A DNA stretch of 64,000 nt from contig OZ316898.1 of the NCBI GenBank assembly GCA_973895155.1, forward strand, positions 8,419,079 to 8,483,078, given 5' to 3'. Below, piece by piece: positions 9,121 through 43,546 of this stretch; position 1 is the first letter of the stretch; every line of letters starts with the position of its first letter. The position numbers were made by a program, and so were the translations under genes. The notes below the pieces were generated by a model. It searched no databases. It had not been told where the DNA came from and saw only the letters and a list, made by a program, of their open reading frames with translations. Source of the stretch: Marsupella aquatica. Lineage: Eukaryota > Plantae > Marchantiophyta.

Positions 9121-10552
9121 CGGCACTGCTTGTGGATACAGGAAAACAGTCATAACAAAATGTCAAGGATAGAGGTCCCGGTAGAATTAAGGAACATGCA
9201 TGACTAGAACTCCAAGGAACAAAGAGCATACTTAGCACGCAAGGAAAAAATAGTAACTTCAATGCACATAATCAATCTTCAGAAAATGAACCAGATTTAG
9301 CTTCACAAGACACAAGATTTCAAGCTTGACCAAGCAGCAAGAGAGTCGATTCATCTACCTAGCAATCCTTAGCTTAATTAAGCACACATGACTGGACATA
9401 AAAAATGGAACAAGCTAAAATAATGACACGGCGTACATGATTGGGATTCCAGTTCAAAGTCGTAAGTTGAAATTCTGGTGATAAAGCTTTTGCTCGATCG
9501 GATGCAAGGACAAGTTTGACTGCATGAGGGTTGATCTCAATCTATGAGCTGTATTACGATCATGGCAGAATAGAACACACACAACAGCACAAATCAGTAT
9601 GCTGAGAATTGGGGTTCCTGATCTTTGAAACTTACTAATGACATTTAATTAATTAACCTGAATCCTACCCGGCTTCCTACTTAGATAAACCAGAATCCAC
9701 GATATTCAAGCTAGGCGCACCAGATTGAGCTTCAAGGGACTACACTTAGGTTAAAGACAGAGATTTCAACCTCAGATAGGGTACACCCAAGGATACGTAC
9801 ACCTATCCAACAATCTTCAACTAGTTAAATTAAACGTACATGAATGGACATTGAATAGTTGAAGCGAGAAGGGACGTACCGAGCTCAAATATAATGACAC
9901 ATACATGTGTCAGTTGCAAGATGAAATTATGTTTATAAACCTTGTATAGAACTGGAATGCAATGACAACTTCAACTGCGCGCTGCATGAGCTAATTTCTA
10001 CAACTTAAACCCTGGAATCATATTAGGGTTGTCTTTGGCAACTAGCGCACCATCTCTAGGGATCTCCTCTTACCAAGAGCTATTGAATCAAGCATAGCTT
10101 TGGGCAAATTGAAGCTAGTTACGCACCTTCTCTTTCCACTTTGTTTGCATATCAAGGATGTAAAATATGCTCACAGGACATTGCGGGCATCGAAAGATTT
10201 TAAAACTTTTAGTCACCCGTTCATTTTTGATACATCCCGCCCGTGGACCACTAGCCTTGGCGTCGTCAATGTCCTGAGTAAAAGAAATACAGTCCACATA
10301 ATGTTATCAGCATGGCTTCTTGATTCTATAACTGAGCAGAAAAACCTGAAATGTCTCGACAATTTAGCTAGGATTGGGAGGCGCACCTGTTGTTTCCGTA
10401 TCTTTGATTGAGGACATGTGCAAGACATACTCGCAGATTGATGGAATGCTTTCAAAGTAAGGTTGAGAACTTCAATGATAGGAAGCGGGAATGTCAGAAA
10501 AACAAGGGCGCAAAGACCAAGCGGGAGGGAAAATTTCAAAAGTAGTGGAGTG

Positions 10553-10970
10553 GAGCCAAGATTGAAATGCTCATAAAATCTGCCCAAGTTTCAGTGCAAA
10601 ATGCAACGCTACGATGAGGTAAAGCCAAGATTGAATCAGCTGGCTCCGAAGTTCTGCCCAGATTTCAGTGCAAAAAACAACGATGTAATGAGGTTGAGCC
10701 AAGACTGATTCGACTAGCTCATAATTTTGACCAAAATTTCAGGGCAGGCGGCAAAGCCAGCATGAGGTGGAGCCAAGAATTAATCAACTGGCTCATAAAA
10801 TCAGCCCAAATTTCAGCGCAAATGGCAAAGCAAAGATGAGGTGGAGCTAAAAATAAATCAACCAGCTCATCAAATCAGCCCAAATTTCAGCGCAAACAGC
10901 AAAGCAGAGATGAGGTGGAGCCAAGATTGAATGAGTTGGCTCATTAGTTCACCCCAAATTTAAGCGCAAG
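10553..10970. repeat. ~74-bp tandem repeat, ~6 degenerate copies (subterminal)
   Basis: GAGCCAAG-like anchors at 10553, 10622, 10696, 10770, 10844 and 10918, each followed by ...GCTCAT...CCCAAATTTCAG. Confidence 0.8.
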
Positions 10971-11305
10971 AAGATATATTCGTGATTAAAGCTTTTGGAT
11001 CCTTGCAGAGTTTCGGACACTTGAAAGTTGCTGTAGCATTTGACTTAACGTCCATCGTAGATTGATATCTGTATCAAATCCTTACCATCCATTCAAAATA
11101 AGACTCATCTTTTATTTCTGACTTGCTTTGATTGCGGCTGGTTTGGTCATTAGCTATACTTTTAAATTCAAAATTATCAAAGGATTCTAAATACAAAGTC
11201 CTTTCATGTAATCCTTGTTTTTCATACTATTAGATACAAGAGAATTCATATCAAAGTCCTTTACTTAGTTGTTCCTTAAGGGTACACCCAATTGTGAATG
11301 TGGCC

Positions 11306-12111
11306 TGGCGAGTCTGGTGATTAGGCAGGACTTCATGAAATATTACTTCACGACTTTCTTTGATCCTATCTGAGATAGAATCCCATAATCGCTAGGTTGA
11401 AGTATTTTCACAATACCCGACAAATACTAACTTACGGCTCTTCTGGTCAAGTTTCTTCCTGAACTGCTGGGGTACAAGAGTGTAGGCCTCACATCCAAAC
11501 ATTCTGAAATGTGAGATAGAAGGTTTCTTCCCTCACCAAGCTTCATAGCTTGTCTTTTCTTGGAGACTCCTGGTGGGTAGACGATTCAGTGTGTGTACAG
11601 CAATGTGAATTGCCTCTGCCCATAATCGAATAGGAGTTCCAGATGCATACAACATACTTTGTGCACTCTCGATAATGGTACAATTGTCTCGCTCAACTCT
11701 CCCATTCTGCTCAGGTGAGGATGGTGTTGTCACCTCATGAGTGATACCAACATCTTCAAGGTATTGAGAGAAAGATTTGCTCACGTATTCACCTCGGTCC
11801 CCTATCAGTGCGAAGTGTTTTGATTTTTTGACCTATGTCTCTAAAGACCTGTTTTTCAAGCTTCTGAAAATAGGAAAAGACTTCTGACTTTTTCTTTATG
11901 AAATATACATAACGGTAACCGCTATGGTCGTCTTTAAAAAGGACATAATAACAGGCTCCACCCAAACTTCTAACACTCATTGGGCCGCATACATCTGAGT
12001 GAAAGAACTCACCAGCTTGCTTAGCACGTTCATGAGAACTGGGGTTTGGGAATATACGGCGGTGTTGTTTCCCAAGTACACATCCTTCACAAAATGGATC
12101 AGCAGGCTCTT
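11306..12111 (-). pseudogene. copia integrase core (frameshifted)
   Basis: ORFs 11789-11980 and 11533-11784 are joined by a frameshift at RTDRG/EY. HSDVCGP motif upstream, FGCEAY downstream. Confidence 0.9.
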
Positions 12112-12470
12112 TGTGATGCCGCCGGTACGGCGAGTAATGAGTAATTCAGTCTAGACCGCGCTTAGCATGCGTGTTAGGGGTATCTTAGACCGCTATTATT
12201 AGCATAATGACAGTATTTAGGTAACCATTATGAGTAGGAAATCATTAGTCAATAAGGGGAATTCATGTTCGGACTGGCGGCATGTTGCCATTCGCGCGCC
12301 CGGGTTGCGAGCGTGGAGGGGCCCCTCCCTCGGGTCAGTATAACGGACTTAGGGAAGCAGCCACTGACATGCGCTGACTCAGACCAGCGGAGTGGCCGGT
12401 ACACTACAAGCGTGAACGGTTCAGCCTATAGGCAACAAGGAGACGTCGGGTGATCGACGAGCCCTCAAGG

Positions 12471-12477
12471 TATAAAA
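12471..12477 (+). promoter_or_regulatory. Putative TATA box of element A
   Basis: TATAAAA followed by GGGAGCCGA, ~120 bp upstream of ORF1. Element B has CATAAGAGAGGAGCCGA at the equivalent position (~38796). Confidence 0.5.
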
Positions 12478-12590
12478 AGGGAGCCGACCCTTTGTAGTGC
12501 ACCAGTCCATCAGTCCACGCGCCAACTTTGACCCCAGCTCGGGCCCCAGCTCTCTCATTCTCTTTTAGTCGCCACTGCTATCTCCTTTGA

Positions 12591-13331
12591 ATGTCGCACA
12601 CGATCCTCTCCAGTTCGGCCATTTGATTCTGGACGCAGTTCTTATCTATCGGAAGACACTTGGCCGACTCATTGAAACACGCCAACCTGCGCCGATACAA
12701 AATCAAACGCGAGTACGAGAGAGCCATCCGCTTAGCAGGATGACACCACTATATCCTTAACTTTGACTACCCATCTCAGAGCGAGCTTTACCGACCAGCA
12801 GAGGTATCTGGGTACTTCTTCAACGGAGACAAATATATTGGTTTCTGGGAAGCATTGCTTCGGCTTCCGGATGAGGTCTTCAATATCCCGGGTACGATCG
12901 ACTTGCAACGACATCACTTCGACCACATCCCTGTTCAGGTTCGGGCTATCATCAACAACGAGTCCAACACTACCCGTTCGACAAGGCCATCTGCACTTGC
13001 TTCAGAGAACTTCTACCAGCACCTGCAGAGCTTCATGGGAGCTAGACCCTCAACCGCCGGCGCCGGCCCAGTCAACCCATACCCGTACCCGCACCAACGT
13101 AGACTCAGGCTCAGCTTCAGTCTCAGCCTCAGCCTAGCCAACCCATACCGCCGATCGCCCCGCCAGTACAAGTACGCTCCGTCATCAACGCTGTGGACCT
13201 TAGCGACGACGACGAGGCTACCCCACCCTTGCTCAGGCGGCCTAGAGGAGCGAACACTTAAGGGGCCGACACTACATCGTCCCCTCCCCATGTCCGGACC
13301 CAAGGAGCGGCTCCAGCAGACAACACGGTGA
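12591..13331 (+). pseudogene. Element A ORF1, unknown function
   Basis: Frame with internal TGA stops. FWEALLRLPDEVFNIPG...FDHIP aligns with VAEAILEVPAKFFKLKG...FDKIP of element B ORF1. Confidence 0.55.
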
Positions 13332-15221
13332 TCATGGCCGCCCCGGGCCCAATACTAACGGCGGTAGCATTACCTATGGCCGATGAAGAGGATGGGGAGG
13401 TGTCACCCTCCCCGAGCCAGTCACGGGGGAAGAAGAGGAAGGAACCCGCTGCTGCATCGGGGTTACCAATGGCCACGGTAGCCGCGACCAAGGTGACAAT
13501 GCACCGCATGGGGGAAAACGTGCATAAAAACATCCTCCATCCCAAACATGCGGTGTACCTGAAAACTCAGGGATTCAAGCACCTCGCCTCTCTCCCTTGG
13601 AACACTTGCAGGTACTATGGGGAGGACATGATTCATCAAGAATTATGACGATGCACGTCAACATACTCGGCTGCGGGGAAGGAATATGTCCCTCACGGAA
13701 GAACGACTCAAGATGATCTTTGGGTTACCTGAAGGTGACCACCGAGTCAAATCATGGGCTCCCGGGGGCAAGGGAGCCAAGTACCAATCCTCGAGTTTTC
13801 CCTCCGAGGGATCAGTGGACAACGGGTTCGTGATGAGGACCTGCCTCATCCCCAAGATAGTTGAGCGACTGGAGTTCCAAAGGTACGCCCTCCACATGAT
13901 GGAACCCCGGGGGGAGATCTCCGCTGCCCAGGTTATCCAGGTCGAGAACTATCGACCTAAGAAGTGGGCGTCGTACTTTGCTAAGAAATTCCATGAAGAG
14001 ATGGAGCGGCGAAGAAAGACGCTATACATTGGCGGGAAGGCATATTTTGCTAGCCACATCGAGATCATTCTCAAGTGGTACGCTCGGTTTGATCGACAAA
14101 CCCTTCCCCGTGTCAACATAACAAAGCTGGTCCCAGCTAGGTGGGTTTTCCCGGCCTTGGAGAGACGGCCCCAACCCGAGGCCCGAAGTCCAGCGGCCAC
14201 GCAGGCTTCACCCACCCCACCTCCACAAGTAGCTGTAGCCGTGGCCGAGGAGGTACCGGATGGGTCGGTAATCGCAACCATAGATGTGATCGACCAGGCC
14301 GGGCCAAGTATAGAAGTTGGGATAGCGGAGGCCATACTTGAGCCCGGGTCTCCCAAAGACCCACCAGTGGCTATTCCGGAGGACCGGACATTGTTGCAGG
14401 AGGACACTCCAACCCCTTCCAACACTCTGTCCCTAGGGCTGGATGTCACTGCCCTGGCCCCTGCGCGTGTTGACGTCTGCCCGTGCCCAACTCCGGACAG
14501 GCACAACCTGGACCACCCGGAACTCTTCGTACCGGGTACATTTTTGAACGGGCTTCTAGGAGATTTCTCTCATCAAATTGCCCGGGATACCGGGGAGTTC
14601 ATGGCCCGGAAGGTAGCCTATTTCTTCAATCAGGAGTTGGTTGTCACAATAAAGGCAGGTCGGGCCCAGTCAGAGGCCCTTCAGAGGATAGAGCAGTACC
14701 GGGTGGATTCCGTATACTTAAAGGACGAAGTTGCAGCTCAAGAGGCTGAGCTTCTGCAACTACGACCCAAAGTTGCAGCCACCGATGAGTTGTTAGCGAA
14801 GGCGCACGCCCTTACCGCCCTAGCCGAACAGGCCAAAGCTGGGAACGAGGCCGAGATTGCACGACTCCGGAACCAGATTGACAATTTGAAGAATCAAACT
14901 GTCATCTGGCAGAAAGACCTGGAGGAGGCCGAAGAATGGGCCCAACGGGACACTGCGGAGATAGCCACACTACAGGCCGAAGTGGCGCGGCTCCAAACCA
15001 AAGCCGAGAAGCAGGACCAGTTGGCGGGCAAGCTGACGAGCGATGCCCAGCAGCTGGAGGAGGCATGCCAGGAGGCAGCAGAGGAGACGGACGTGGCGAA
15101 GTGAGAGAACAAATCTCTGCTGGACCAGGTCCAGCTCCTCAAGGCGGACAACGACAGACTTTGTAAGCAACGGGATGGCCGCTCCCACTCCGGCGGCTCT
15201 GGCAAGCGTGCCAGACATTAG
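13328..15221 (+). pseudogene. Element A ORF2: plant-transposon-type N-terminal domain, Pro-rich linker, long coiled coil
   Basis: ORFs 13328-13648 and 13686-15104, read through TGA to 15221. Homologous to 39623-41332 (SLTE.RL..IFGLP.G, LHM.EPR.EIS, IGGK.Y..SHI.IIL.WY, EVARLQT.A). Confidence 0.75.
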
Positions 15222-16113
15222 CAGCGGAATAGGAATAGAATAAGGTTAGGAATAGCTAAATCAGGCTATGGGGACAGGAACCTGCCCTAGTTAGAGCAGC
15301 ACTGCCATGCTGTCCAGCCTGCGTAGGTTAGGATCTTCTAATAAGACACAACCGTTTTTTTGGTCTGACAGTCAGATTAGTTAGGACCTAAGTCAGCAAA
15401 TCTTCGGGGGAGGAAACTCTGTTCCTCGGCCCTTAGTATTTAGTGCACCCCTCGGTAGAGGCAGGGGTTTTTAGTCTCAGTATTGGACATCCGCAGTATG
15501 TGCGGGGAGTCCCGACCTCTGGGAGTGAAAGAGTACCAAGGGGAGGGTGTAAGACTAAGCTCGCTGGGCGAGTGTGGAGCCGGGCTCCGTTGTAGTGTAC
15601 ACCCTCAGCCTCGAACCTGTTCACTCCAGAGCATTTGGGTCAACTAAGTGTACGCGTATGTCTCTTATGGAGTAAAATCCCTTCCCGTTATTTCCTTCGT
15701 GTAAATTGAGACTTTATGCTTGTGCGTATGTATGTGTGTGAATCTCGTGTATAGGTCCCAACGCTTGGCCGAACGCACTACCCAAGTAGTGCATGGGGTG
15801 CAGCTTGCGTGTACGTGGTTGCGAGCCCGGGTTGAGCACCCATATCAACAAAATCCAGATCGAAGGCGGACAATACAAAGGCTTAGAAGCCCTTAAGCCA
15901 GGGTCGATCCTGCTATCGATTGAGGTACGTTCTAGCGGGGGAACACAAATCATACCTAGGAGGTGTCCGTATATGACGATAGGTGCACTTAGCGCTATTT
16001 TACGTAAGTTGGGTGCATTCCGTGCCTCCCTCCCTGCCCAAACCCTCATTTTGACAAAGGATGTGCCTGTTTAAGCTGAAGCCCGGAGTAAGGCCAAGGC
16101 TGACGACGTGACA

Positions 16114-17906
16114 CTCTTTCAGCTCTGTAGGGTAAACCATCTACTAGATTTTCTCTCTGCATCTTTCGTAGAGCTGGAAGGTTAGCATGACCACAACGAT
16201 AGTGCCACAACAGGATATTGTCAAGATCTGTTGTTGATGTCGTGGATATGACAGCATGTGCCTGACTAGATTGTTGAACCACCTCAAGCTGAAGTTTGTA
16301 CAACTTTCCATCTCTCCTGCCACTCAAAACCTCAACTCCACCTTCATCTTGAACACCACATCCATGTCTATGGTACGTAGTGATCATTCCATTATCAGCG
16401 GCTTGTCCAATGGAAAACAAATTCCTCCTTAGCTTGGGAACGTAAAGAACATTCTGAAGAATACCAGAATAAACTTTACCTTACAATCCTTTTGTGACAA
16501 CTTTGATGTATCCGCATCCTTCAACCCATAGCTGGTGGTTGTCGTCAACTTGTACTGACCATGTATGTGGCGGTACAGACCGAAATGTATGGAAATATGA
16601 CCTCATGCTAGTCATGTGCTCACTTGCACCACCATCTGCATACCAAACTTTAGTATCGTTTGTTGATGATGAAAGGACAGCAAAAGCAATGCTCTCAGTG
16701 GTGGAGACATTAGCTTCACTTTGTTGTGGCGTGATGTCATTGGCTGCACTCCTTCCGTTGCCGTTTGAATTGCCTTTGCTCCTACATTCTCGTGCCCAAT
16801 GCCCCTTGTTGCCACACTTGTTGCAATTGGTCTTTTTCTTTTGATCAGCAATAGACCCTCTTCGGGATATTTTCTCAGTATCAGAATAGGCTCTGTTCTG
16901 ATTACTGAAAAATGCCCTAGCATCATCTTGACTTACTGCTTCACCTGCCGGGTACAATGTCGCTTCCTTGAGAAGTCGACTTGTGAGCTTGTCAAGTGTT
17001 TGCTGATCAGAAGGTACATTGTCCCAAGCTGCCAACACATGTCGATATGATGCTGGAAGACTACAGATTATCTTAGTGATAATTGTAGAATCAGTGACTG
17101 TCTCTCCCAAATCATTGAGTTGTTGTGCCATGGCCTCAATCTTGCTAATGTGAGTAGCCATATCATCTTCCGCCTAGAGCTTGTGCTCAAAGAATCTTTG
17201 TTGCAGCAAATGTTGATTCTTTGCAGCATTCTGATCGTGAAGAGTACTCAGTCTTGTCCACATTTGATTAGAAGATTTACAGTTCACTAGGCGCTGTATA
17301 ATCTTCTCATGAAGTGCGGCACAAATGGTGGATTGCATGATTGAGGACTACCATTTTAGTCCTTTTTTCTCCATAAGAAAGGACTCCATGAGCACTTAAT
17401 AGGAGTCCATGAGCACTGAATGTGCCACATATCCCTTGATGGCTAGGATTGAGTAGTTGAGATTGAAAGGTTAGATCTTGCATGCCAAGTCTTTTGGAAG
17501 TGTGTCCACACTTTTTGAAAGTCCTTACCTCTTGGAAGTGTGCCCAACATTTGTGGAAGTGTGTCATGAAGTATTTTTTACCTAAGATGTGCTAATCTTG
17601 GTCGTTGACAGTCCTTGGATTAGTGAAAGGACTGGAGACTTTTTTGCCTCCTTTGGTAGCCCTCAATCATGCAATCCACCAAATGTACATCTTCGCTGCC
17701 TTGTCCTTAGTGTTCCATTCTCTAGTACTCGCTGCTGGAGCACCCGGAGCAGGCTTGGCTTCACTACCGTCGATGACTCCCATCAACTCCTTTGCATCAA
17801 AGACTAATTGAATCTGAAATTTCCATAACTGGAAATTTGATCCTAAAAAAATTGTAATGTGGGAAACGTCTTTGATCTCGGGTTTGCTACCCGTTGCTCT
17901 ATCCAT
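16114..17906 (-). pseudogene. copia gag-protease-pre-integrase region
   Basis: ATG at 17906 (MDRATG...NFQLWKFQI). Frame is restored after MITE removal (AKMYICAALHEKIIQ). In-frame TAG at ~17174. Zinc knuckle and protease lie in ORF 16481-17161. Confidence 0.88.
17327..17680. mobile_element. 354-bp MITE, 27-bp TIRs, 4-bp TSD AAAT (Sola-like)
   Basis: TIR GGTGGATTGCATGATTGAGG(A/G)CTACCA at both ends, one mismatch. AAAT at 17323-17326 and 17681-17684. Excision restores the gag frame. Confidence 0.93.
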
Positions 17907-18640: not shown

Positions 18641-20227
18641 CACTAGTACATATTAAGCTGATTTTCGATGCTCAATTTTTGTGAACAATCGCTGTCCGAT
18701 TCTTTTAGCATCGGAAATTCCGATTATCAAAAAATGGCAATATGCCATACTCTCGGCTTTGGATATCTTCATTTCCGATATAATTGACAACGGAACCTTT
18801 CTGATGCGTTAAAAAACGGATCATATCCGTTAGAAAACACATCGGATCCCTCAACAGAAACTTTGATTGATATGTCCGATGTTTTTTGTAACGAAAATGA
18901 TGTGCGTTACAATATTGATCGGAAACTTTCCGTAGTTAATAAGAACAGATATTATATCCGATTGTGCTAACATGGCAAAGTCCGATGTTGGGAGAATGGG
19001 AAAGTCCGATGTTGGGAGTATGGGAAAGTCCGATGCTAGAAGAATGGGAAAGTCCGATGCTGGGAGTATGGGAAAGTCCGATGCTAGAAGAATGGGAAAG
19101 TCCGATGCTGGGAGTATGGGAAAGTCTGGTTATGACAAAAAGAAAATTTTTGATTGTGTTAGAATGAAAAGTTTTGATGTGTTAGATGGGGTATGTGGTT
19201 GCACCGACATACTCTTCCCAAAAGATGCAATCATTCTTGCATGCATGAATAACTTCATACTTGAGGCAAATGGACTTGAGTGTTGTTTTTGCCTCATTCC
19301 AAGACCCAACATATTGTTCCCTTACGGAAATATGTGCTCAACATGCCAAGTCCAAAATACATCATCTAGAAGGAGGTTGTTTGTCCCATGTAGTCTTTGT
19401 TGCAAGTCCAACAACAACATAGTTGATAAAAGATGAGACAATCAGGAGCCATTGACGCTGAGACTTTGGAAGGACCAAAATATCATCCATAACTAATAAG
19501 CCATAATTATCCCATATCAAATCTAATGAAGGAGGGCTTTACTATCGATGAATGACCCATGCCAGATTTCTATTGGTTTCTCCTAGGGGAATGTAACAGG
19601 GTAACTAGAATAGGTCACTTGATGCAAAGATCTAATCTCATGATAGAGAAAAATGGATCAAGAATGGGTCCAAATTATGGGTCTTAGTAAACTCACAAGT
19701 GTATAAAATCCCCAAACACTCTAAGTCAAACAACAAAAGTGCTAAGCTTGCATGTACAATGTAAGGAATAAGAACCACAAAGTTAAGCTCATGTTGGAGG
19801 AATAGCAATTGGGATGGGTGACCAATTAGTTGAGAAAATTTGAAGAGTTCACATGTCAAGGGAGATGGGCACCTAGCTCATAGTTCCAAATGAAAGTAGA
19901 AACCCAATTAAAGGAAGAGATGGGTGACCTGAGCATGTCGCGTCCGCTGAAATGCATATCCCATTTTGATTGCTTCGGACTTTCCCATTCTCTCACCATC
20001 GGACTTTCCCATTCTCCTAGCATCGGACTTTCCCATTCTCCCACCATCGGACTTTCCCATTCTCCCACCATCGGACTTTCCGATAGAAGTCCGATTGTCG
20101 ATATCCGATACTATTAAAATGGCATGTTGCGATGCTAGTAGTATCGGATATATGGTTTTTCAAATTTTATTTTACAAAGGCGTCCGATGTGGAGAGAATC
20201 GGAAAAAGGAGGTAAAATGTACTAGTG
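18641..20227. mobile_element. Non-autonomous CACTA element (1.59 kb)
   Basis: TIR CACTAGTACAT at both ends; 3-bp TSD GAA (18638-40, 20228-30). Many TCCGAT/ATCGGA subterminal motifs, and 24-bp tandem arrays in opposite orientation (18970-19130; 19975-20085). Confidence 0.93.
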
Positions 20228-22119
20228 GAAGGCGTAGGTTTGGGTAAGATATGGGCAACAGTTACGGAACTCGACTACATTAACACTTAACTCCGACGTC
20301 GCTGACTCCGACGCCGAGCTCCTTTATGGTCCAGGCCCGGATAGGCCATCCGGGGAGGACTTAGCACGGGGAGACTTGTGGGCAATGAGACGTGGCACTA
20401 GCGAGGCAAGGGGCCAAGCTGGGGACACACACTAAGGACTTGGACTGGCCTATGGCTGGTCGGGTCAAGGGCAAATGGGCCGGGCTCAAGGATGACCGTC
20501 TGGACCATCGGATGGGCTTTGAGTTCTGAGGGCTTGGGAGTGAGCTCCACTTGGGCCCAAGGCCAATGGAGTTGACGCCATTTGCAACGGACGCTTGGGG
20601 CGCAAGTTGTGGCCCGATCCGGATTGGGCCAGTCTGGGGCCCTGAGCGGCAATCAGACCTGAGGGCCTAGGCATGAGCACTGGGTCGGCCCAGTCACAAC
20701 GGGCTAAGGCACTCCGCTTGTGGATGCCTATCAAGAAAGTTATGGGCGTTGCCAGTTGGTGGCGTGCCCATTATGCGCGATGGGATCCGGGTTGGGGGCC
20801 AAATGTTTAGGGACCAAAGTTGGTCCGGGGGTGGCAGGTCTTCAGAAGCATATATGAGGGGAGTGGTGTCTCCCTGGGGGCTAAGGCCGAGTCGAAGTCG
20901 TGAGCCGCGAGGGTCGCGACACTAGGAAAACCGCCAAACAGAAATGATGATATCTTTCCAATGGGAAGTCTGTTGGAGGACTTCCTGGGTTCGTTGGAAA
21001 GCTATTGAGGAAGGCTACGCCCTACTGAGCTCAGATGGGTCTGGGGGTGCCATAGATTCTCGTGGTTTGCGGGTGTTAGCTCGCCCTCTTGCCAAATCCT
21101 GCCGAACAGCAGCCAAACCGCGTTCAGCCTCCCAAGGGAGCTTGCGTTGGGGAGGCAAGGCCAAGTAGGTATGGAGGCTGAGTCCCAAGGGTGCTTGATC
21201 CCTAGACCATCAGTGGGGTGAACTGGGAGCGGTTGCTAGAATCGGGGCCGTTCTGGTCCCGACGTGTTGGGACGAGCTTGGGACAAGCTTTAGGACAAGC
21301 TACGCTATTGGGCCATGAGCATGTCCTAAGGTCAGGGCGGTCAGTTGGTGATGGATAGGTACAAGGGGGAACCCGGGCCGCGCCCAAGGAAGGAGTTGTC
21401 CTGGACGGACAGTGGGCGTGGGTTTTGGTTCCGGCTTATGGCATTGGGAGGACCTATCGCTGACCTATTTACCAACGTCTGTTGAGCTTGAGTTGGTATG
21501 CTAGACTTGGCGAGTTCTAGATCCGGAGGGGTTACTTACCGAGGTGTTTGGTTGCTTGTGCAGACAGTGAGGACCGTTGAGTAACGGTCGTGTAGGTGAA
21601 CAAGTGCGGCTTCGTATGGGAGGGGCCGCAGGTGGTGCTAGAGGCACTTGGATGCTTGCTCGAGGTGTTCCGTGGAGGCGTTCGGACACCAAGGGCACTT
21701 AGGTGCAAGTGCTGGGATTAGTGAGGGCGTTGGGTGGCTAGGTCCACCACTGCAACTCAAGCAAGACAATTGAGATTAAAAGGAGTAGGGTTCAATATGA
21801 AAGTGCCAGAAAATCATATTTTTAAAGAAGGGTTAGAGTGGTTCATGCCTTTGTTGAGTTTGTCAACTGAAGAAGTGATTTTTGGCCAGATCGGGTGTTA
21901 AAGTGGTAGATGATTATGGTGAACATGCACAAGTTGCTATTTGCAAAAGTAGATTCTATTCCACCTGGGGTTAGCTTACTAAGTATCTACTTAGCTCTAA
22001 AATAGTCCTTTACCACTAGTACTAAGTAACTTTATTGTTGCGAAATGAACACTACGTGCTTAGGAGTTCACTTTTTGGGGACATATTGCCTAGAGAACCT
22101 GGAGCTGCGGGGCTGTCCT

Positions 22120-28423: not shown

Positions 28424-28570
28424 TGTTATGAATACACAAGATGATAGTATTCAATAATCCCCACACACTTCCATTATGCCAAGGACTTATATAGTCCAGA
28501 AGGGTTAACATGGTTGGGTTAATGTTAACCTATCCTATACTAGGGTTAAGTCATATTATGGGTTATAACA
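28424..28570 (-). repeat. 3' LTR (147 bp)
   Basis: TGTTAT...ATAACA; identical to 34070-34216; PPT adjacent. Confidence 0.95.
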
Positions 28571-36110: not shown

Positions 36111-38884
36111 AATGTCTGGCGTCCCCAGATGAATTGCATCGAAAACCATCCAGTCATATTGCCAATGAATACCATGAAATGTCGATGGGTATCATGAATG
36201 TAAGGTTCTTTATTGGGCCCAGCTTACGCAAATCAAATTTCTAATATGGTTTTGAATCATTTCCTCATAGCGTTGTAAATAAGATCACATTGAGTTAAGT
36301 AGCATTCATTTGTACATTAGAAACTAAGTACGTTAGCAACTCCCGTCTCTCTCTATATATATATGTATATATATATGTGAAACACGAAGCAAGTAGTGGT
36401 GGCCCTTGGTCAATATATAATGCAATCATATTCATAACCAGTCTAGCTTGTGCCGTTCATAGAGCGATGCAGGTATGCTATCTATGTAGTGAGTACTATA
36501 CCTCTTCCCCAGCTTTCTTCATAGCATTTTTAGGGAAGATCCTTTGTTGGCCATCGGCATTTAAAGCCGGAAGATGTGTAAATCATCCTATTCATTAAAA
36601 GTGTATTTTATTTTGTTCACTTTTAGGCCTCTAAATGTTCACTTTTTGGTCTCTAAATGTACACTTTTTAAACCCAAAAGGTACACTATGGTATAATACT
36701 CTACACCTAAATGATCAATTGTAAACTTGAAGTGAAAAAAATGAGCTTGACTAGAAGGCGTCTCATCCTAGTTCATTTACAAAGGATGAACATGGTGGTA
36801 CATTTGATGGCCATCAACTTTATTTCTTGCCTAATTGTACACTTTTTGAAGGCCAAATGTACACTTTCTATTGCCCAAATGTTCATAAATTGAATAATAA
36901 TTGACTTTTAATGAATAGATTGATGTAACGATCACTACATTCTGCTCTACAATCCACCTGGCCACCATGTCCAATAACTCTGATGCATTCTTCTGGTGTT
37001 TGGTGAATGGCTTGGGGGTAGTCTTTGACCGCTTGTTCGTATCTGCTACAAACGTGCGCAATTTGGCCTCCACTTCGCAGGTCTTCATCAAACCCATGGC
37101 TCTCATGCACAATACTAGTTTGGCGTCTTTGGTGAGCTTTTCAAAATTCTGCAAAAGTTACTGTCTTTGGTGAGCTTTAAAACATGGTAGTACACCAATG
37201 ACAAGCCATAAATGATTATTTACAGAATCGTGCAAAACTTCTCAGTATATGCTTACTATATTGGAGTCTCCAGAAGCCTGGGACTTGTTACTTCTCATCG
37301 ACCGGGTTCCTTGAGCACGCAAAACTTCTTCCTGGTTTGCCTGTACATATATAATGACCACATAATGAGACCACAAGAGTACGTTCCACACATACAATTT
37401 CTGTCTACACATTGTACACAATGATCGCTGCAACCTAATAAAGACTGCTGGCTTACAATGGATGGAAATAAGAAATCATACCATGTTTTTGCCGGTCAAC
37501 AACCGTTCCCTTGCATCCTCTTGTACCTTTGTTGAAATAGCTCTAAATGAAGGTACGTTTTCTTTGCCTGGGTTCGGACCCTTGCCTCTTTGTGCTCTAC
37601 TCAATGGTTGATTTAGGTCCCGAATGCTTGCAAGGACTCCACCTTGTTCCTTCTCGGTCTTAACCTGCCATGCATATGTGGATGTGCAAATCATTGTATA
37701 TATTGGTGAACCTAGGCTCAAAGTAGAATGAATTGCAAAGTCATATACATCACTTACAATAGAACTTTTAGGCCATTATAATAATTGCAATATACAAAAC
37801 TTATACATACAATGATATATGATATATACCTTGGACAGTAGCGGGTTGTTTCCCCCTGTAGGACTGCTCTCAATCTTTTGTCTTTTTACCTGAAAAATAA
37901 GTATAAAGCAAACTCGGTGTCTTAATTTTAATTACGTACGTATGATATATAAGAACGCAACTAGCATGACAAAATACTTGTACCTCCGGTTCCGGTTGAT
38001 CGTTAGGCCTTATATTAGTGTCTTCATCATCCTTGTCAGATTCAATGTAAAGTTGGGTGGATGTAGTGAAGCAATCAACTTGCAAGTTGATAGTTGATGT
38101 TGACAATGTTTTCTCCTGGCTGCATGTAGTGGTATCCAGTACTTCAGTATCCTCGCTTGGCTCTCCATCGCTGGACTTGACCGCATCATCTTCTTTGCTT
38201 TCCTCTCTATGCTCTACTTCCGCCCCTCCCTCTGCATCTTCTTCATGGCCAGCTAATGCCAACACTTGCTTCTTCGGTTTTGAAAGAGGGTTTTCCTCAA
38301 CGTCAGGCATCTCCGGTAACCCCACTCCATTGGAGGCCTTTCTTGAGACAGCAGAACCCTCAGGAGAGGGACCTATCTCTGGTAACCCCGCTCTCTTGGA
38401 GGTCTTTCCTGAGACAGCAGAACCCTGAGGAGAGGGACCTGAATACGATTGGCATACTTTATGAGCCAGATTGGGACTGTGACACGGGCAACGTGTCACT
38501 TGACCGAACCCAGGTCGAAGATTAGGACTTATACGGTCAAAAGGACCGTAGCCATAGCGTAGAATAGCACGTATAGCCGCCAAGTTGCCATTATGATTAG
38601 ATTAGGAGTAGGTTAAGATAACCGAATAATTACGAGTTCAGGAAAGGGATTATTACGCACGACCGAGGTACGGTGGCGGCAGCGGAGTAAAAATCAGTTA
38701 GAAGAATCACGCTTGGACCGAGACGCCGACTTCAGCTCGTTATCAATGACCAAACGGCCTGACCTTCTCACGCTCGGGCTCGTCCTGGCACCCCCATAAG
38801 AGAGGAGCCGATGGCACTGCGGGCCATTCGCTCACGTTTACCTTTTTGGAATTCACGGACGCTGCCATCCGCTCGCCTTTTTGA

Positions 38885-39595
38885 TTGAATCCAGTCGACC
38901 TTTACGAGGAAATTATCGAGGGAGAAGAGCGGAATGTGGCGAGATTCAGTCAGGACGAGCGAGGCCTCCGCAAAAAAGGACCAGCCAGGTGGGAACGTGG
39001 ACGCAACGAACCGGACTACGAGGTTAGTATGACCCTCACAGCCTTGGGATTTTGGACCTTGTTTGGCGAGGTAGGTGCTAAGTTCTCCGAGACTTACTGG
39101 TACTCTTGCCCCGAGAAAGCCGCTTACGAACGAAGGTACGCGAAGCTGGTAACCAAGGTAGCACTGGTTAATTGCGAAAGGACAGCCATCACCAGGGATT
39201 CTAGCTATAACGAGCTGCGAGACTACATCACCGAACTATATCTCAGCGAGGAAGGGCTTAGATCGGTAGCAGAGGCGATTCTTGAGGTTCCAGCTAAGTT
39301 CTTTAAGCTGAAGGGCAACCAGCGGCTTACTCAAGCGGAGTTCGACAAGATTCCGAGGAACCTAGACCAACAGATCGCAGCCGAAAAGCGCCAAGAAGAC
39401 ATCAGCAGACAACGGGAAGCGGCGCGTAATCTCACGTTCCTCGGGGAAAGCTCCAACGCCTTCAACTGGGATATGGCTACCCCAGCGCCTCAACCGATGA
39501 CCACCGGAGTACCGCCGAACCAGTCCCAAGTCCGTCCAGTAATCAACGCGGAGTGTTCTTCGGGTTCCGATCGAGCTAGTCCGCAACTCGAATAG
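38885..39595 (+). CDS. Element B ORF1, unknown function
   Basis: 236-aa open frame, homologous to element A ORF1. True start is uncertain. Confidence 0.6.
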   Translation: MNPVDLYEEIIEGEERNVARFSQDERGLRKKGPARWERGRNEPDYEVSMTLTALGFWTLFGEVGAKFSETYWYSCPEKAAYERRYAKLVTKVALVNCERTAITRDSSYNELRDYITELYLSEEGLRSVAEAILEVPAKFFKLKGNQRLTQAEFDKIPRNLDQQIAAEKRQEDISRQREAARNLTFLGESSNAFNWDMATPAPQPMTTGVPPNQSQVRPVINAECSSGSDRASPQLE

Positions 39596-39622
39596 TGTCC
39601 TCGTAAGCGGTCAAGGACTACG

Positions 39623-41332
39623 ATGGCCCCCAAATCAACATGGACCGACGCCGCACCTGCACCTGCCCCGGCAAACCCCCCGACCAACCAGACCCGACGG
39701 CCCCCGGATAACCCGAAGTCCAACTTATTACAGGTAATCCGCGTCCCCGAGGTAGTCTGGATCGCGATCAAGAAACTCGAACATGCGGACTATCTCAAGG
39801 AGCATCAGTTGGAGCGATTTGCCCACTTACTATGGAGGCCGTGCGCCGCCAGGCCGAAGGAGATTTGTGAGTTCATCTCCAATTTTGACACTGATGCGTC
39901 AACCACCAAGGTTTCGGGGCAGACCTTATCACTCACGGAGCATCGATTAACGCAAATTTTTGGCCTACCAACCGGGCCGGTGCCGGTGGAAATCCGAATT
40001 CGGGATAAGGAGTATACGACGCGGCACTTCAAACCCGAGGGTAAGACAGACAATGGATACAAGCAGGGGGCGTGCACCAACTTAACCTGTATGGAGCGGC
40101 TTAACTTCATACGGACTACCCTACACATGATTGAGCCACGATCCGAGATTTCCCTCTGCACGATCGTGCAGGTGGAACAGTACAAACGACAAAACTGGGC
40201 CCAATTCTTCTACCAAAGATTCTCGGGGGAGCTGAAGCGGGCTCAGGGTGGTATGGCTATTGGAGGGAAGACTTACTTGGGAAGTCATATCGCCATTATC
40301 CTCGCCTGGTACAAGGCACGGCGGGAGGCCAGAGGAAAGAATACGGCCACCTCAGCCCCGGGTAATGTCACCCCCGCCCCAGAGGAGGTAACCCCGACTA
40401 CGCGGACTACTGTCCCTCGGACAAACCCCGAGCCGAAAGCCCCGACTAATACTCCGCAACCGCCCCCTGTGGAAATTCCACCGCCTCCTTCCGTTGAGCC
40501 TCCGCTACCTGCAGTACAACCACCCCCAATCCCTCCACCACCTGAAGAAACCTTCCCCTCCCCAGCGCTGACTACGGAGGAGCTCATTGCCCCTGCCGAG
40601 GAACCACCGGTACCCGAGAGGATGGAGGACTACCAAGTAGCCCCGGGGACCATGGCCTACGACCTGGTCCAGAAGTTTAGCCAGACTATGTCTGGGGAGT
40701 TGGCGACATATATCGGACAATAAGTCTCGGCGTACTTTCAGCCAGCCTTCTTCATGTTAGAGCACCAACCACGGATCGTCAGCCGCTTGGAAGAAGAACT
40801 CATGGCGAAGGGGAATGAGATCGGGCGTCTCCAGATGCTGGTAGAGCACCTCGAGGAAGAGGCAACGACCCGCCGCGAGGATTTAGTCCGCAATGTCGAA
40901 CAGAGGGACGGACTAACCCAGGAGTTAAGCGGAGCGCAGACCGAACTCAAGAAGCTGGACAACATCGTGCTTCAATTACGCTCAGAATCTTTGGCTCGGG
41001 TTACCAGCCTGACCAACCTCAACAAACAATTCCTGCAGGCAGCACAGCAGGTGGCTAGTCTCTCCGCCGAATGAGATAAATTGCTAGCGCAGGACCAGGT
41101 CCATCACGACGCCATCGACCAGCTCAACTTGGAGGTGGCGCGGCTCCAGACTGAAGCCGATGAAGCTGCAAACGAGACGGAGGAAGCATTACGGGACAAC
41201 AAGGCTTTGCAGGACCGCGTCACCCTGCTCGTCCTCCAGCGGGGAAAACCTGGGCCCACCTCTGATCAAGGCAGCTCGAGGTCTCGCCCCGACAAGGGGA
41301 CCAGCCCTGGTCCAACCACTGCACACACGTAA
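39623..41332 (+). pseudogene. Element B ORF2: plant-transposon-type N-terminal domain, Pro-rich linker, coiled coil
   Basis: ORFs 39623-40723, 40754-41074 and 41081-41332 lie in one frame, split by TAA and TGA. Homologous to element A ORF2. Confidence 0.8.
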
Positions 41333-43546
41333 GGGGTAGTTAGCGAAGGGTAGAAGCAGGCGCCGCGCGAGGCGGTTAAGTCAGCAGCATCTTTTAGTTA
41401 GGCGTAACAATAGAATGACTGTCATTAGGCGCCGATTAGCGGCAGTAGGAAGAATTAGGGCCGGTCAGTTAGGATCAGCCAACGTAGGATTGAGTCCATC
41501 AACGGACTAGAGTTTGTCAGTAGGCTTGGCCGCTGCCATTCCGGTTGGCACACTCGTAGTCGACGGTCAACCGGTCAGTGCAGTGCGACCAGTAGTCAGC
41601 AGTTAGTTAGTCAGTAGGTAGTACCCCGGAAGGTAGTATCCTCCGGTTCTCTTCCGCTATGGTAGTATTTAGGCTTCCCCTTCCGCGATGGGAAGTGGGA
41701 GAATTCTTAGTTATCTCAGCAGAAGAAAGGCGAGGCACGGGGAGTCCCAGCCTGAGTAGGGTCAGAGCGTACCAAGGAGTGAGAGCCAGAGTCGAGCTTG
41801 CTGGGCAAGTGCGAGGCAGGGCCTCGTAGAGACTGGGCATCGACTACCGTTGGGCCTGCTGACCCCCTTTGAAGTCGAGTCAACCATGTAAACTGATGCT
41901 TCGCTGAGTAAATGTAGTCTTTTCCCCCTAATGTTTCTGAGAGTAACTGGTGTTGTGTGTATGCTTTGTCCGGGCAAAGGCGCCATTTTAAGGGACGTAC
42001 CGGGTGTGGACTAATGGTAGGGATTGCCACTCATTGCATGTCACAAGTTCCTGTCACGTCAATGGCTTGAAAAGCCCCAAGTCGGGAGTTAGTCCACGTC
42101 ACTAACTGAGGGAAAATTCCAGCGGTGGAAAATAAATATACCTATGTCAAGTACGAATTATGCGAGTGTTATACCAGTAAGTATAGCGGTTTAGCCCGAC
42201 TTAGGGCTAATGAAGGTCACTACACACCTCCTTGCCCGAACCCTCACCCCTACTGGTGGTCGAGGTCGCACCACGACACTAACCCGGATTTAAGGCCCAG
42301 GGTAGGGGTGCGACAGGGACTCATGGAACAATATGCTCTCGGAACAAAAATGGACATGTCTTGCAATATGTACATGCACATCAATAGTGACGGTGCATGA
42401 GTGCCAGGGAATCTTGCAATATAAATATATTGTAGAAAACCACATTCATTCAACATCTCTACCTCTCGATACATATTGGCTGGGCAACATAAAAAAACCC
42501 GGAGAAGCAGATTCATTCCGATGCAATGAACCTAGGGTTGGTAAATGCATATATATATATATTTATATATGTATATGGCACCATACTTACTGGTTTTAAG
42601 TGCCCAAACTGTACCATCTGCAGACCCTTTGAAGGTGTCATTAATGGCACCCAGTAAGGCGCCAGGAATGATGGATTACCATCATACAAGGCCTTCATGA
42701 ACTTACTTTCTTAATAACATGGACGCTCTCTGGTATTCCGCGACCAACGACCTCTCCACTGTACTGCCCCCTATACCTTACAGACTTATCAGCGTCTCTC
42801 ATTTGCAGTTCTACCAAGGTCACCTTGAATGCATACGCACGAAGTTCCACAAAAATCTCTGGGTATGATTGTCCATGTCCAATGGCAATCGCTTCATCTG
42901 CATCTGGTTCTACCTTCATATCTGCAAAATCAGTGGGCTCCTTTTTTCGGGCCGTAGGGATGGCACCTACAATGAAATTCAGTGCAAGTACTTGAGGTTA
43001 ATTCCAGGGTATTTCCAGGTTATTTCCAAGTTGCGAAAGATAGAACACAGTTCATTGCCACAATCAATGGCACTGCGCTAACTAATGAATGGGAATCTGT
43101 CAGTACGTACCTTCCTTGATTTTTGCATTTGCTTTCCTCCATTCATGCTTTCTGTTCTTGACGACCTCAAACAAGAAGCTTTTTGGCCAAGGCATCTCAT
43201 GTTTAGATCCGGTTTCTGGACACTCAAATTTGAGAGGTGAAAGTTCGTGCATTCTACTCTGAACATACAATCGACAATTCTCTTTTGTCTTTGTGTCAGA
43301 CTTGAAATCTGCACTGAGGTATTCGTATATCTCCTTGTCGGCGGCGAAATTCGCAAACCAATTCCTCACCGTTCTGTAATTTGCCTTGTGAGCTTGGTGC
43401 GCTTCTACATGCTTAGAAGCCAGAATGGACCGTCCTCCAGATTTGTTGGTCACATTGAAGATGTCCTCTGCCGAAGGATAGAACTGTGCACAGCAGCGTC
43501 GAAACACACATCAGCGTGTATTCAATCAAACAAAGAAACTACCATT

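What the first reader, a model, noticed from the sequence alone, without database searches (positions are those of the whole stretch)
12112..16113. Family of ~4-kb TG...CA elements with 5-bp TSDs and two ORFs but no RT, integrase or LTR pair (copy A; copy B at 38478-42315)
Seen: two independent insertions (TSDs CTCTT and GGGAC) start TGTGA and end GACA. They share one layout: TATA-like box, ORF1, ORF2 (N-terminal domain, Pro linker, coiled coil), then a ~0.9-kb structured tail. Proteins are clearly homologous while DNA is highly diverged, so these are two subfamilies. Known: TG..CA ends with 5-bp TSDs are the signature of LTR-retroelement integrases. Inference: these are either solo LTRs of a retrotransposon whose giant LTR itself encodes two proteins (compare MMTV sag or HIV nef; unusual in plants), or a non-autonomous unit mobilised in trans.
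Basis: partly seen in the sequence, partly recalled or inferred. Interest (0 to 1): 0.85.

Follow-up and report, generated by a model that had tools for sequence, protein, structure and literature searches.

The report
Gene-carrying solo LTRs of gypsy retrotransposons
The two ~4-kb insertions are lone terminal repeats (solo LTRs) left by a liverwort-type Ty3/gypsy retrotransposon group whose unusually long LTRs carry their own protein gene, with a DNA-binding fold like the transposon anti-silencing factor VANC21; both copies here are decayed, and I found no paper describing this layout in plants.

Summary
Copy A (12113-16113, TSD CTCTT) and copy B (38478-42315, TSD GGGAC) are real insertions. 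Public runs contain the empty site of B, joined exactly at the TSD, and removing A rejoins a copia integrase gene. Neither copy has internal terminal repeats, RT or integrase. Their DNA does not align, but the ORF2 N-terminal domain is 45-51% identical. ORF1 is only weakly alike.

In Calypogeia fissa, homologues of ORF2 lie inside long direct repeats. These repeats start TGTGA directly after a PPT and flank gag-PR-RT-RNaseH-INT, so they are giant coding LTRs. A and B are therefore solo LTRs of two diverged subfamilies. Both are pseudogenised by frameshifts and premature stops.

The ORF2 N-domain folds confidently (pLDDT 95). Its only structural match is VANC21 bound to DNA (Z 8.0), with no Pfam hit. 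C. fissa LTRs carry dense arrays of a 7-mer around the gene, as VANDAL elements do for VANC. An anti-silencing role is inferred, not shown.

This scan had already found gene-carrying giant LTRs on other DNA of this genome. This report adds two further subfamilies, the empty site and the motif arrays. I found no published description.

The parts
12108..12112 (.). Copy A, left target-site duplication CTCTT
   Evidence: Read directly. The same 5 bases recur at 16114-16118.
12113..16113 (+). Copy A: 4001-bp solo LTR (TGTGA...GTGACA) inserted into a copia integrase gene on the minus strand
   Evidence: GC is 51-57%. No internal terminal repeats.
12471..12478 (+). Copy A: TATAAAAA followed by GGGAGCCGA; candidate promoter of the LTR gene cassette (inferred)
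   Evidence: Similar ATAAGAGAGGAGCCGA in B at 38796-38811. No RNA data.
12592..13261 (+). Copy A: ORF1 remnant, spread over two frames with stops
   Evidence: weak homology to B ORF1 (E 3e-4 and 0.003).
13328..15221 (+). Copy A: ORF2 remnant. N-domain about 13505-14111, Pro-rich linker about 14112-14560, coiled coil about 14640-15218. Frameshift near 13610-13690 and premature TGA at 15102.
   Evidence: Homology continues past the TGA.
15222..16113 (+). Copy A: non-coding tail with blocks shared with B. TAGTATTTAG at 15435-15444, CGGGGAGTCCC... block at 15513-15591, AGTAAA plus GT-rich run at 15671-15740, end ...TAAGGCCAAGG..GACA.
   Evidence: Alignment. The U3/R/U5 assignment is inferred.
16114..16118 (.). 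Copy A, right target-site duplication CTCTT
38473..38477 (.). Copy B, left target-site duplication GGGAC
   Evidence: The empty-site joint 38472->42316 is seen in runs X1, X2 and X3.
38478..42315 (+). Copy B: 3838-bp solo LTR (TGTGAC...GCGACA). It is absent from this site in the three runs that show the empty-site joint and belongs to an abundant family.
   Evidence: Summed contig depth inside is 20-100x that of the flanks.
38885..39595 (+). Copy B: ORF1, 236 open codons, function unknown
   Evidence: No homologues, no Atlas lead, AF2 pLDDT 45.
39623..41332 (+). Copy B: ORF2, 569 codons in one frame, with premature TAA at 40721 and TGA at 41072
39716..40342 (+). Copy B: ORF2 N-terminal domain with a VANC21/PMD-like fold
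   Evidence: AF2 pLDDT 95.4. Foldseek gives 9lnj_A only, E 0.026, prob 0.99. VIA-align gives 9lnk_A at Z 8.0 with 187 of 209 residues aligned; the next hit is Z 2.6. 33 homologues by phmmer.
40343..40630 (+). Copy B: Pro-rich linker of ORF2
   Evidence: Translation.
40754..41243 (+). Copy B: coiled-coil region of ORF2
   Evidence: Only coiled-coil-type Pfam noise. Homologous to the end of A ORF2.
41333..42315 (+). Copy B: non-coding tail. TAGTATTTAG at 41663-41672, CGGGGAGTCCC... block at 41738-41828, AGTAAA plus GT-rich run at 41907-41965.
42316..42320 (.). Copy B, right target-site duplication GGGAC

Best explanation
A and B are solo LTRs. Each is what remains after the two LTRs of an inserted Ty3/gypsy retrotransposon recombined, which leaves one LTR between the original 5-bp target duplications.

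The parent elements belong to a group seen so far in liverwort-type genomes. In this group the LTR starts immediately after pol and is 3.8-5 kb long because it contains an accessory gene cassette. In A and B the cassette is a small ORF1 plus ORF2. ORF2 has an N-terminal VANC21/PMD-fold domain, a proline-rich linker and a C-terminal coiled coil. A and B come from two old subfamilies: synonymous sites are saturated while the protein domain is conserved. Both are now pseudogenes.

Layout of the LTR (inferred):
- The cassette lies in U3, with its own upstream TATA-like promoter.
- The element's promoter, R and U5 occupy the last ~650 nt. These hold a conserved TATTTA-like box, a conserved hairpin-prone block, and AGTAAA with a GT-rich run about 410-440 nt before the LTR end.
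- Reverse transcription would therefore copy the gene to both ends of the element.
- A solo LTR would then remain a complete gene unit.

Function (inferred, about 0.3): ORF2 binds short DNA motifs arrayed in its own LTR as a coiled-coil oligomer and counteracts silencing, as VANC does for VANDAL elements.
For: Shown:
- TG..CA ends, 5-bp TSDs, an empty site for B and a rejoined copia integrase for A.
- No internal repeats, RT or integrase.
- High copy number of the B family.
- ORF2 homologues sit inside paired long repeats flanking gag-pol in four C. fissa loci. The repeats are 94-96.5% identical, start TGTGA after a PPT, and run to the end of each fetched locus.
- Past constraint on ORF2: pN 0.38-0.43 against pS 0.79-0.81, and codon-position identity 0.55/0.64/0.40.
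- Fold: AF2 pLDDT 95.4. VANC21-DNA is the sole match by Foldseek and by VIA-align at Z 8.0, with the next hit at 2.6. The ESM Atlas's nearest named clusters are PMD and DUF1985.
- Motif arrays: GCGCTTA occurs 38 times in L003 against 1.47 expected, almost all in LTR non-coding parts on both sides of the gene. Other families carry other motifs, for example CCGGATA 14 times in L006.
- VANC21 binds arrayed 9-mers in non-coding parts of its own transposon (PMC5735166), has a coiled coil, and is structurally homologous to the PMD protein MAIN (PMC13547354).
- Tail signals lie at similar distances from the LTR end in A, B and L002.
Against: - I saw no full-length element of the A or B subfamily, and no complete 3' LTR in C. 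fissa, because each locus stops 1.3-1.6 kb into it. That the whole gene lies inside the LTR therefore rests on combining the TSD-delimited units here with the paired repeats there.
- The PBS was not identified.
- There is no Pfam match to PMD or DUF1985 in any of 33 homologues. Z 8 is a middling score, so the match shows shared fold, not shared function.
- A has no enriched motif. B's enriched 7-mer, CGGACTA, lies mostly in coding sequence rather than in arrays.
- The same GCGCTTA motif occurs in C. fissa families whose proteins are only about 35% identical. This fits protein-motif co-evolution poorly.
- No RNA data are available, so the TSS, the polyA site and any expression are unknown.
- B carries premature stops yet is absent from its site in the runs that show the empty-site joint, so the gene may not be needed in cis.
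Confidence: 0.8

Rival explanations
1. Each 4-kb unit is a complete non-autonomous element, not an LTR remnant. It is copied and inserted as such by the RT and integrase of another element.
For: Both copies are singletons with perfect TSDs. B is absent from its site in the runs that show the empty-site joint, and its family is very abundant. No full-length partner of these two subfamilies was seen in the window.
Against: The units have no PBS, no PPT and no terminal R repeats, which every known RT/integrase-dependent element needs. Homologous gene-bearing repeats are demonstrably paired LTRs around gag-pol in C. fissa and share the same TGTGA start. Long LTRs are expected to recombine readily into solo LTRs (my own knowledge).
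Confidence: 0.07
2. They are solo LTRs, but ORF2 is not an anti-silencing factor. It serves another step of the element's life cycle, for example as a transcription activator of the LTR promoter, a chromatin tether that guides integration, or a nucleic-acid chaperone or structural protein. Alternatively it acts as a repressor, as host PMD proteins do.
For: Fold similarity shows DNA binding at most. The structurally related host PMD proteins MAIN and MAIL1 act in silencing, not against it (PMC7156037, PMC13547354). The shared GCGCTTA motif across diverged proteins would also fit a host factor site. PMD-type extra ORFs in Ogre elements have no known function (PMC6317226).
Against: Three features match VANC specifically (PMC5735166, PMC13547354): the gene is TE-encoded, it combines this fold with a coiled coil, and dense family-specific motif arrays sit in the element's own non-coding DNA. 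None of these is a functional test.
Confidence: 0.45
3. The ORFs are captured host-gene fragments or chance open frames in GC-rich LTR DNA, without function for the element.
For: Both copies are broken. ORF1 has no homologues. Neither ORF has a Pfam family.
Against: The ORF2 domain is conserved at 45-51% identity between LTRs whose DNA no longer aligns, with pN well below the saturated pS. 33 homologues include intact proteins of 518-744 aa. The fold model is very confident. The same position in the LTR is kept across genera.
Confidence: 0.03

Closest known systems
Gene-carrying giant LTRs of Calypogeia fissa Ty3/gypsy elements (loci L002, L003, L008, L010; unnamed proteins CAM6082161.1, CAM6086213.1 and others), and the like units already noted by this scan elsewhere in this genome
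   Same: The LTR starts TGTGA directly after pol and the PPT. A homologous gene (N-domain, linker, coiled coil) begins about 1-1.25 kb into the LTR. A ~0.9-2 kb non-coding tail follows, with a polyA-like signal about 400-500 nt from the end.
   Different: A and B are single LTRs, shorter (3.8-4.0 kb against about 5 kb), only 24-36% identical in the domain, preceded by a separate ORF1, and decayed. As far as I could find, these elements have not been described in a paper.
Ogre/Tat-type plant Ty3/gypsy elements with extra ORFs, notably the plant mobile domain ORF (Neumann et al. 2019, PMC6317226)
   Same: Both are non-chromovirus-like gypsy elements with very long LTRs (up to about 5 kb). Both carry an accessory ORF of the PMD/VANC fold class, and the extra ORFs are fast-evolving and heterogeneous.
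   Different: [quoted passage not shown] Their PMD is recognised by Pfam PF10536, whereas this domain is not. The lineage of the liverwort elements was not determined here.
VANC21 of the Mutator-like transposon VANDAL21/Hi, Arabidopsis (PMC5735166; PDB 9LNK/9LNJ)
   Same: Both are TE-encoded accessory proteins. VANC21 is the only solved structure with the same fold as the ORF2 N-domain (Z 8.0), and both have a coiled coil. In C. fissa relatives there are dense arrays of a short motif in the element's own non-coding DNA.
   Different: VANC21 is carried by a DNA transposon in dicots, this gene by an LTR retrotransposon in a liverwort-type genome. Sequence identity is 11% and there is no DUF1985 match. 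DNA binding and demethylation are untested here.
Retroviral genes lying in or overlapping the U3 part of the LTR: MMTV sag, HIV/SIV nef, foamy-virus bet (my own knowledge, not checked here)
   Same: An accessory gene lies downstream of pol/env and inside the sequence that is duplicated as the LTR.
   Different: Those are short overlaps or single small genes in vertebrate retroviruses. Here about 70% of a 4-kb LTR is coding, and the element is a plant retrotransposon. The U3 placement here is inferred, not mapped.
LARD/TRIM non-autonomous LTR elements
   Same: No RT or integrase, TG..CA ends and 5-bp TSDs.
   Different: LARDs and TRIMs have two LTRs, a PBS and a PPT. A and B have no internal terminal repeats.

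Membership tests
Solo LTR of an LTR retrotransposon | TG...CA termini flanked by a direct target-site duplication of 4-6 bp | tested here: met
   A: TGTGA..GACA with CTCTT on both sides. B: TGTGA..GACA with GGGAC on both sides.
Solo LTR of an LTR retrotransposon | It is an insertion: an empty site exists or the flanks are contiguous | tested here: met
   B: joint 38472->42316 in runs X1, X2 and X3. A: the flanks rejoin a copia integrase.
Solo LTR of an LTR retrotransposon | The same sequence family occurs as a pair flanking PBS-gag-pol-PPT | tested here: inconclusive
   Met for homologous gene-bearing LTRs in C. fissa, although the 3' LTRs are cut by the locus ends. Not tested for the A and B subfamilies themselves, because the rest of the source genome could not be read.
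Solo LTR of an LTR retrotransposon | No internal LTR pair, PBS or coding capacity for RT/IN (separates it from LARD/TRIM and from full elements) | tested here: met
   Longest self-matches are 11-17 nt. No RT or integrase Pfam hits.
VANC (DUF1985) anti-silencing proteins | Sequence match to Pfam PF09331 (DUF1985) | tested here: not met
   None of the 33 aligned homologues hits it at E <= 0.1. There is only an ESM-Atlas feature lead at 0.93.
VANC (DUF1985) anti-silencing proteins | Fold of the VANC21 DNA-binding domain | tested here: met
   9lnk_A at Z 8.0, rmsd 4.1, 187 of 209 residues aligned, with the next chain at Z 2.6. Foldseek prob 0.99, E 0.026.
VANC (DUF1985) anti-silencing proteins | Binds short motifs arrayed in non-coding DNA of its own element and causes loss of methylation there | not testable with these tools
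   Only the precondition was seen: family-specific motif arrays in the LTRs of relatives. This is weak or absent in A and B.
VANC (DUF1985) anti-silencing proteins | Encoded by a VANDAL (Mutator-like) DNA transposon | tested here: not met
   Here the gene is encoded in the LTR of Ty3/gypsy elements.
Plant mobile domain (PMD, PF10536) | Sequence match to PF10536 | tested here: not met
   No hit in any of the 33 members or in the window ORFs. Kinship is suggested only indirectly: VANC is structurally homologous to MAIN (PMC13547354), and the Atlas gives a PMD cluster at 0.93.
LARD/TRIM non-autonomous LTR elements | Two terminal direct repeats with a PBS and PPT between them | tested here: not met

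The most novel reading that the evidence does not exclude
Liverwort gypsy retrotransposons carry, inside the LTR itself, a VANC-like sequence-specific anti-silencing gene together with its own binding-site arrays. Every LTR, including the many solo LTRs, would then be a self-contained helper gene that can protect the whole family in trans. This would be the first anti-silencing system found in a retrotransposon and outside flowering plants. It would also push the association between transposable elements and the VANC/PMD fold back to early land plants.
Probability: 0.2. Interest if true: 0.85.

Novelty: new variant of a known kind. Interest (0 to 1): 0.6.

Why it matters
LTRs are normally treated as non-coding promoter and terminator modules, and solo LTRs as dead scars. 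Here about 70% of the LTR is a conserved gene. Reverse transcription therefore doubles the gene, and LTR-LTR recombination leaves a complete gene unit behind rather than debris.

The protein shares its fold and its coiled coil with VANC21. VANC21 is the only transposon protein shown to undo host DNA methylation in a sequence-specific way. Relatives of these LTRs carry motif arrays of the kind VANC proteins bind. If the function is the same, retrotransposons of early-diverging land plants have their own counter-silencing system. VANC is currently said to be dicot-specific and derived from a host MAIN-like gene (PMC13547354), and that view would need revising.

There is also a practical point. 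Annotation pipelines may call such LTR genes as host genes: the C. fissa homologues are deposited as 'unnamed protein product'.

Tried and rejected
- Pfam on all window ORFs and on 33 homologues gave only coiled-coil noise: no PMD, DUF1985, Transposase_28/32, gag or env.
- A profile search of PDB sequences gave coiled-coil noise only.
The exhaustive phmmer search with the N-domain alone found 33 homologues.
- ORF1 gave no homologues, no Atlas lead, and a single-sequence AF2 model at pLDDT 45 that is unusable. No ORF1 counterpart turned up in the C. fissa or Logan loci by tblastn.
- DNA transposon reading: rejected. The ends share only TGT/ACA, and there is no transposase.
- LARD/TRIM reading: rejected.
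- Tandem pol-LTR-gag-pol array in L003: rejected. The upstream RT belongs to a LINE, with an endonuclease domain and a polyA tail.
- PBS identification in L002/L003: inconclusive. The most conserved stretch starts TTGGCGCTAGATGG, but it does not fit a tRNA 3' end by my count. The LTR more likely ends at ...TTGACA about 45 nt further on. There are no tRNA genes in the window for comparison.
- Six C. fissa look-ups aimed at a complete 3' LTR all stopped at the 10-kb flank limit or hit other contexts.
- MAFFT alignment of the A and B 5' non-coding heads was poor. Only CCATTATGA.TAG and the TATA-like box with GGAGCCGA are shared.
Full report
**1. The observation**

- Copy A reads TGTGATGCC... from 12113 and ends ...GACGTGACA at 16113. 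CTCTT lies on both sides.
- Copy B reads TGTGACACG... from 38478 and ends ...GGTGCGACA at 42315. GGGAC lies on both sides.
- Both are GC-rich islands (51-57% against 37-45% in the 1-kb bins beside them).

Two independent checks show they are insertions. First, I laid contigs of four public runs on 37900-42900. In three runs one contig joins 38472 directly to 42316, skipping 3843 nt (the 3838-nt element plus one TSD), with six letters fitting either side. In run X3 this 851-nt contig has the same depth as the flanks, so that sample lacks B at this site. Second, deleting A and one CTCTT brings together, on the minus strand, the copia integrase motifs ...LVDGLPYRAE and ...PFCEGCVLGKQHR. The copia element is itself degenerate, and a frame change lies close to the junction.

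Summed contig depth inside B is 20-100 times that of its flanks, so the family is abundant.

Neither unit contains terminal direct repeats; the longest self-matches are 11-17 nt. Neither has RT, integrase or any other Pfam domain.

**2. Shared layout**

The DNA of A and B does not align, apart from one 35-nt match. The proteins do.

- The ORF2 N-terminal domain is 44.6% identical over 101 codons and 51% over 35, with joint E about 1e-37.
- Over 101-139 aligned codons, pN is 0.38-0.43 while pS is 0.79-0.81 (saturated). Identity by codon position is 0.55/0.64/0.40. This is the signature of long purifying selection in the ancestors of both copies.
- The coiled-coil C-termini are also alike, and the likeness continues past A's TGA at 15102.
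- ORF1 is only weakly alike: 26% over 82 aa (E 3e-4) and 48% over the last 37 aa.
- The tails share discrete blocks:
  - TAGTATTTAG (A 15435, B 41663).
  - An ~80-90-nt block starting CGGGGAGTCCC (A 15513-15591, B 41738-41828).
  - AGTAAA followed by a GT-rich run (A 15671, B 41907).
  - A block about 160-190 nt from the end.
  - The terminal ...TAAGGCC.AGG...GACA.

Neither copy is intact.

- A ORF1 is spread over two frames.
- A ORF2 has a frameshift near 13610-13690 and a premature TGA at 15102.
- B ORF2 is 569 codons in one frame with a TAA at 40721 and a TGA at 41072.
- B ORF1 is open (236 codons).

**3. What they are**

An exhaustive phmmer search with the B N-domain found 33 homologues among 1.8 billion representatives, at best 35% identity. 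The only named ones are 'unnamed protein product' of the leafy liverwort Calypogeia fissa. The others come from Logan, ENA and JGI contigs.

- In L002 the homologue (518 aa, 10001-11557) lies inside a repeat: 8738-10288 matches 19927-21557 at 94%, and the match runs to the end of the fetched locus.
- In L003 (630 aa) 9016-10509 matches 20413-21893 at 96.5%.
- L008 and L010 are further full-length copies of the same two families.
- Between the repeats lie a CCHC gag, RT, RNase H and an H2C2/rve integrase in Ty3/gypsy order.
- The repeat begins TGTGAGGCCCC immediately after AAGTGGGGAGCTA, about 90 nt past the end of pol. This is the same TGTGA start as A and B.
- In a second element in L002 and in L004, the homologous gene follows integrase.
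- The RT upstream of the L003 LTR belongs to a LINE, so this is not a tandem array.

These are therefore giant LTRs that contain the gene. A and B, single and TSD-flanked, are solo LTRs of two further subfamilies.

One limit remains. Every C. fissa 3' LTR is cut 1.3-1.6 kb in by the flank limit, and I saw no full-length A- or B-type element. That the whole gene lies inside the LTR follows from combining the two lines of evidence.

**4. The protein**

With the 33-sequence alignment, AlphaFold2 models the 209-residue N-domain at pLDDT 95.4 and pTM 0.91.

- Foldseek against the PDB finds one credible match, VANC21 bound to its target DNA (9lnj_A, E 0.026, prob 0.99, TMq 0.54). The next hit has E 2.5.
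- The Foldseek-independent search of 48,161 chains gives 9lnk_A at Z 8.0, rmsd 4.1 Å, 187 of 209 residues aligned. The next chain scores Z 2.6.
- There is no sequence-level membership. No PF09331 (DUF1985) or PF10536 (PMD) hit appears in any of the 33 members.
- The ESM Atlas's nearest named clusters are PMD and DUF1985, both at 0.93. These are leads only.

Published work states that VANC is structurally homologous to the PMD protein MAIN and has a coiled coil used for oligomerisation (PMC13547354). The architecture here, this fold plus a linker plus a coiled coil, is therefore VANC-like.

**5. A functional hint from relatives**

VANC21 binds a 9-mer that is arrayed at high density in non-coding parts of its own transposon, and related VANCs use other motifs (PMC5735166). 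I therefore looked for arrays.

- In L003, GCGCTTA (often as the palindrome TAAGCGCTTA) occurs 38 times against 1.47 expected, with a maximum of 5 in 100 shuffles. Of these, 12 lie upstream and 10 downstream of the gene in the 5' LTR, 12 in the partial 3' LTR, 4 in the 6-kb internal region and none in the 9-kb flank.
- L002 shows the same pattern.
- L004 has 8 copies within 240 nt just upstream of its gene.
- L006 has CCGGATA 14 times against 0.24 expected. L005 has ACCCTAAA 7 times.

Three caveats apply. The three C. fissa families share one motif although their proteins are only about 35% identical. A has no enriched motif. B's enriched CGGACTA, with 8 of the window's 11 sites, lies mostly in coding sequence. 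The anti-silencing reading is thus an inference, which I put at about 0.3.

**6. How the LTR is probably organised (inferred)**

- Between L002 and L003, gag-pol and the last ~850 nt of the LTR are 81-84% identical. The 4 kb carrying the promoter, gene and arrays barely aligns, and the proteins are 35% identical. A fast-changing or exchangeable 5' part next to a conserved 3' part is the usual U3 against R-U5 pattern.
- In A, B and L002 a polyA-like signal lies about 410-500 nt before the LTR end.
- In A and B this signal is preceded by the conserved TATTTA-like box and the hairpin-prone block.
- I therefore place the gene cassette in U3, with its own TATA-like box (A 12471, B 38796), and the element's promoter, R and U5 in the last ~650 nt.
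- Because the LTR starts right after pol, the layout looks like a 3' extra ORF that was taken into the LTR when the plus-strand primer site moved upstream. I saw only the LTR start next to pol.

No RNA data were available to test any of this.

**7. Comparison and novelty**

Plant Ty3/gypsy elements with extra ORFs are known. These include a PMD ORF in 57% of Ogre elements, and LTRs reach up to about 5 kb. [quoted passage not shown] Genes inside U3 are known to me from retroviruses (MMTV sag, nef, bet).

Five full-text searches found no description of gene-bearing LTRs in plants, nor of VANC-like genes in retrotransposons.

This scan had already reported gene-carrying giant LTRs, their presence in C. 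fissa and the VANC21-like fold on other DNA of this genome. I reproduced these points independently here. What this report adds:
- two more, older subfamilies with a separate ORF1;
- an empty site showing that B is missing from its site in other samples;
- the motif arrays;
- the contrast between conserved gag-pol and a diverged LTR gene.

**8. Verdict**

I class the finding as a new variant of a known kind. The two copies themselves are decayed relics. The interest lies in the element type they reveal.

Noticed in passing
L003:9108-9472, 12427-13683, 20505-20856; L002:8843-8983, 12066-13189, 20034-20594; L004:9531-9771: There are dense arrays of GCGCTTA, often as the palindrome TAAGCGCTTA, confined to the non-coding parts of C. 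fissa gene-bearing LTRs. L003 has 38 sites against 1.47 expected. The motif is almost absent from gag-pol and from the flanks.
   Followed up: partly
window 39012-41509: CGGACTA occurs 8 times inside copy B, out of 11 in the whole 64-kb window (3.5 expected). The sites are spaced 25-565 nt apart and lie mostly in coding sequence, on both strands. Unexplained.
   Followed up: partly
L002:8747-20003 versus L003:9025-20477: Two C. fissa elements have gag-pol and LTR tails that are 81-84% identical in DNA, yet their LTR genes are only about 35% identical in protein, and the 5' 4 kb of the LTR barely aligns. Either the LTR module was swapped by recombination or the gene cassette evolves very fast.
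   Followed up: partly
window 39480-39790: In the public runs, many contigs of the B family skip or replace this stretch, which spans the ORF1 C-terminus and the ORF2 N-terminus. There are joints skipping 241-308 nt and loose ends at 39484 and 39644. This appears to be a hypervariable junction between the two ORFs.
   Followed up: no
window 15513-15591 and 41738-41828: This ~80-90-nt non-coding block starts CGGGGAGTCCC and is conserved between A and B although the surrounding DNA is not. It may be the start of R or a packaging signal.
   Followed up: partly
window 11533-17161, minus strand: The host of copy A is a degenerate Ty1/copia element with a CCHC gag at 16481-17161 and integrase pieces on both sides of A.
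   Followed up: partly
window 22122-25537: A tandem array of about five 700-bp units at 95-100% identity, with 103-nt sub-repeats at its start.
   Followed up: no
window 28423-34219: Two 151-nt direct repeats (99% identical) lie 5646 nt apart around long minus-strand ORFs of 329, 238 and 950 aa. This is probably a separate, ordinary LTR element with short LTRs.
   Followed up: no
window 38309-38440: Two tandem 66-nt units (89% identical) lie immediately left of B's insertion site.
   Followed up: no
L005:1773-5319 and L001:83-3666: The Logan contigs carrying intact homologues (673 and 623 aa) hold repeated telomere-like ACCCTAAA/CCTAAAC motifs around the gene. L005 also has a 560-aa minus-strand ORF with no Pfam hit next to it.
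   Followed up: no
L007:1-8625 versus L008:1558-8529: Two C. fissa loci 375 kb apart, in opposite orientation, share 99% identical flanks as well as the element. This looks like a segmental duplication that includes a gene-bearing LTR.
   Followed up: no
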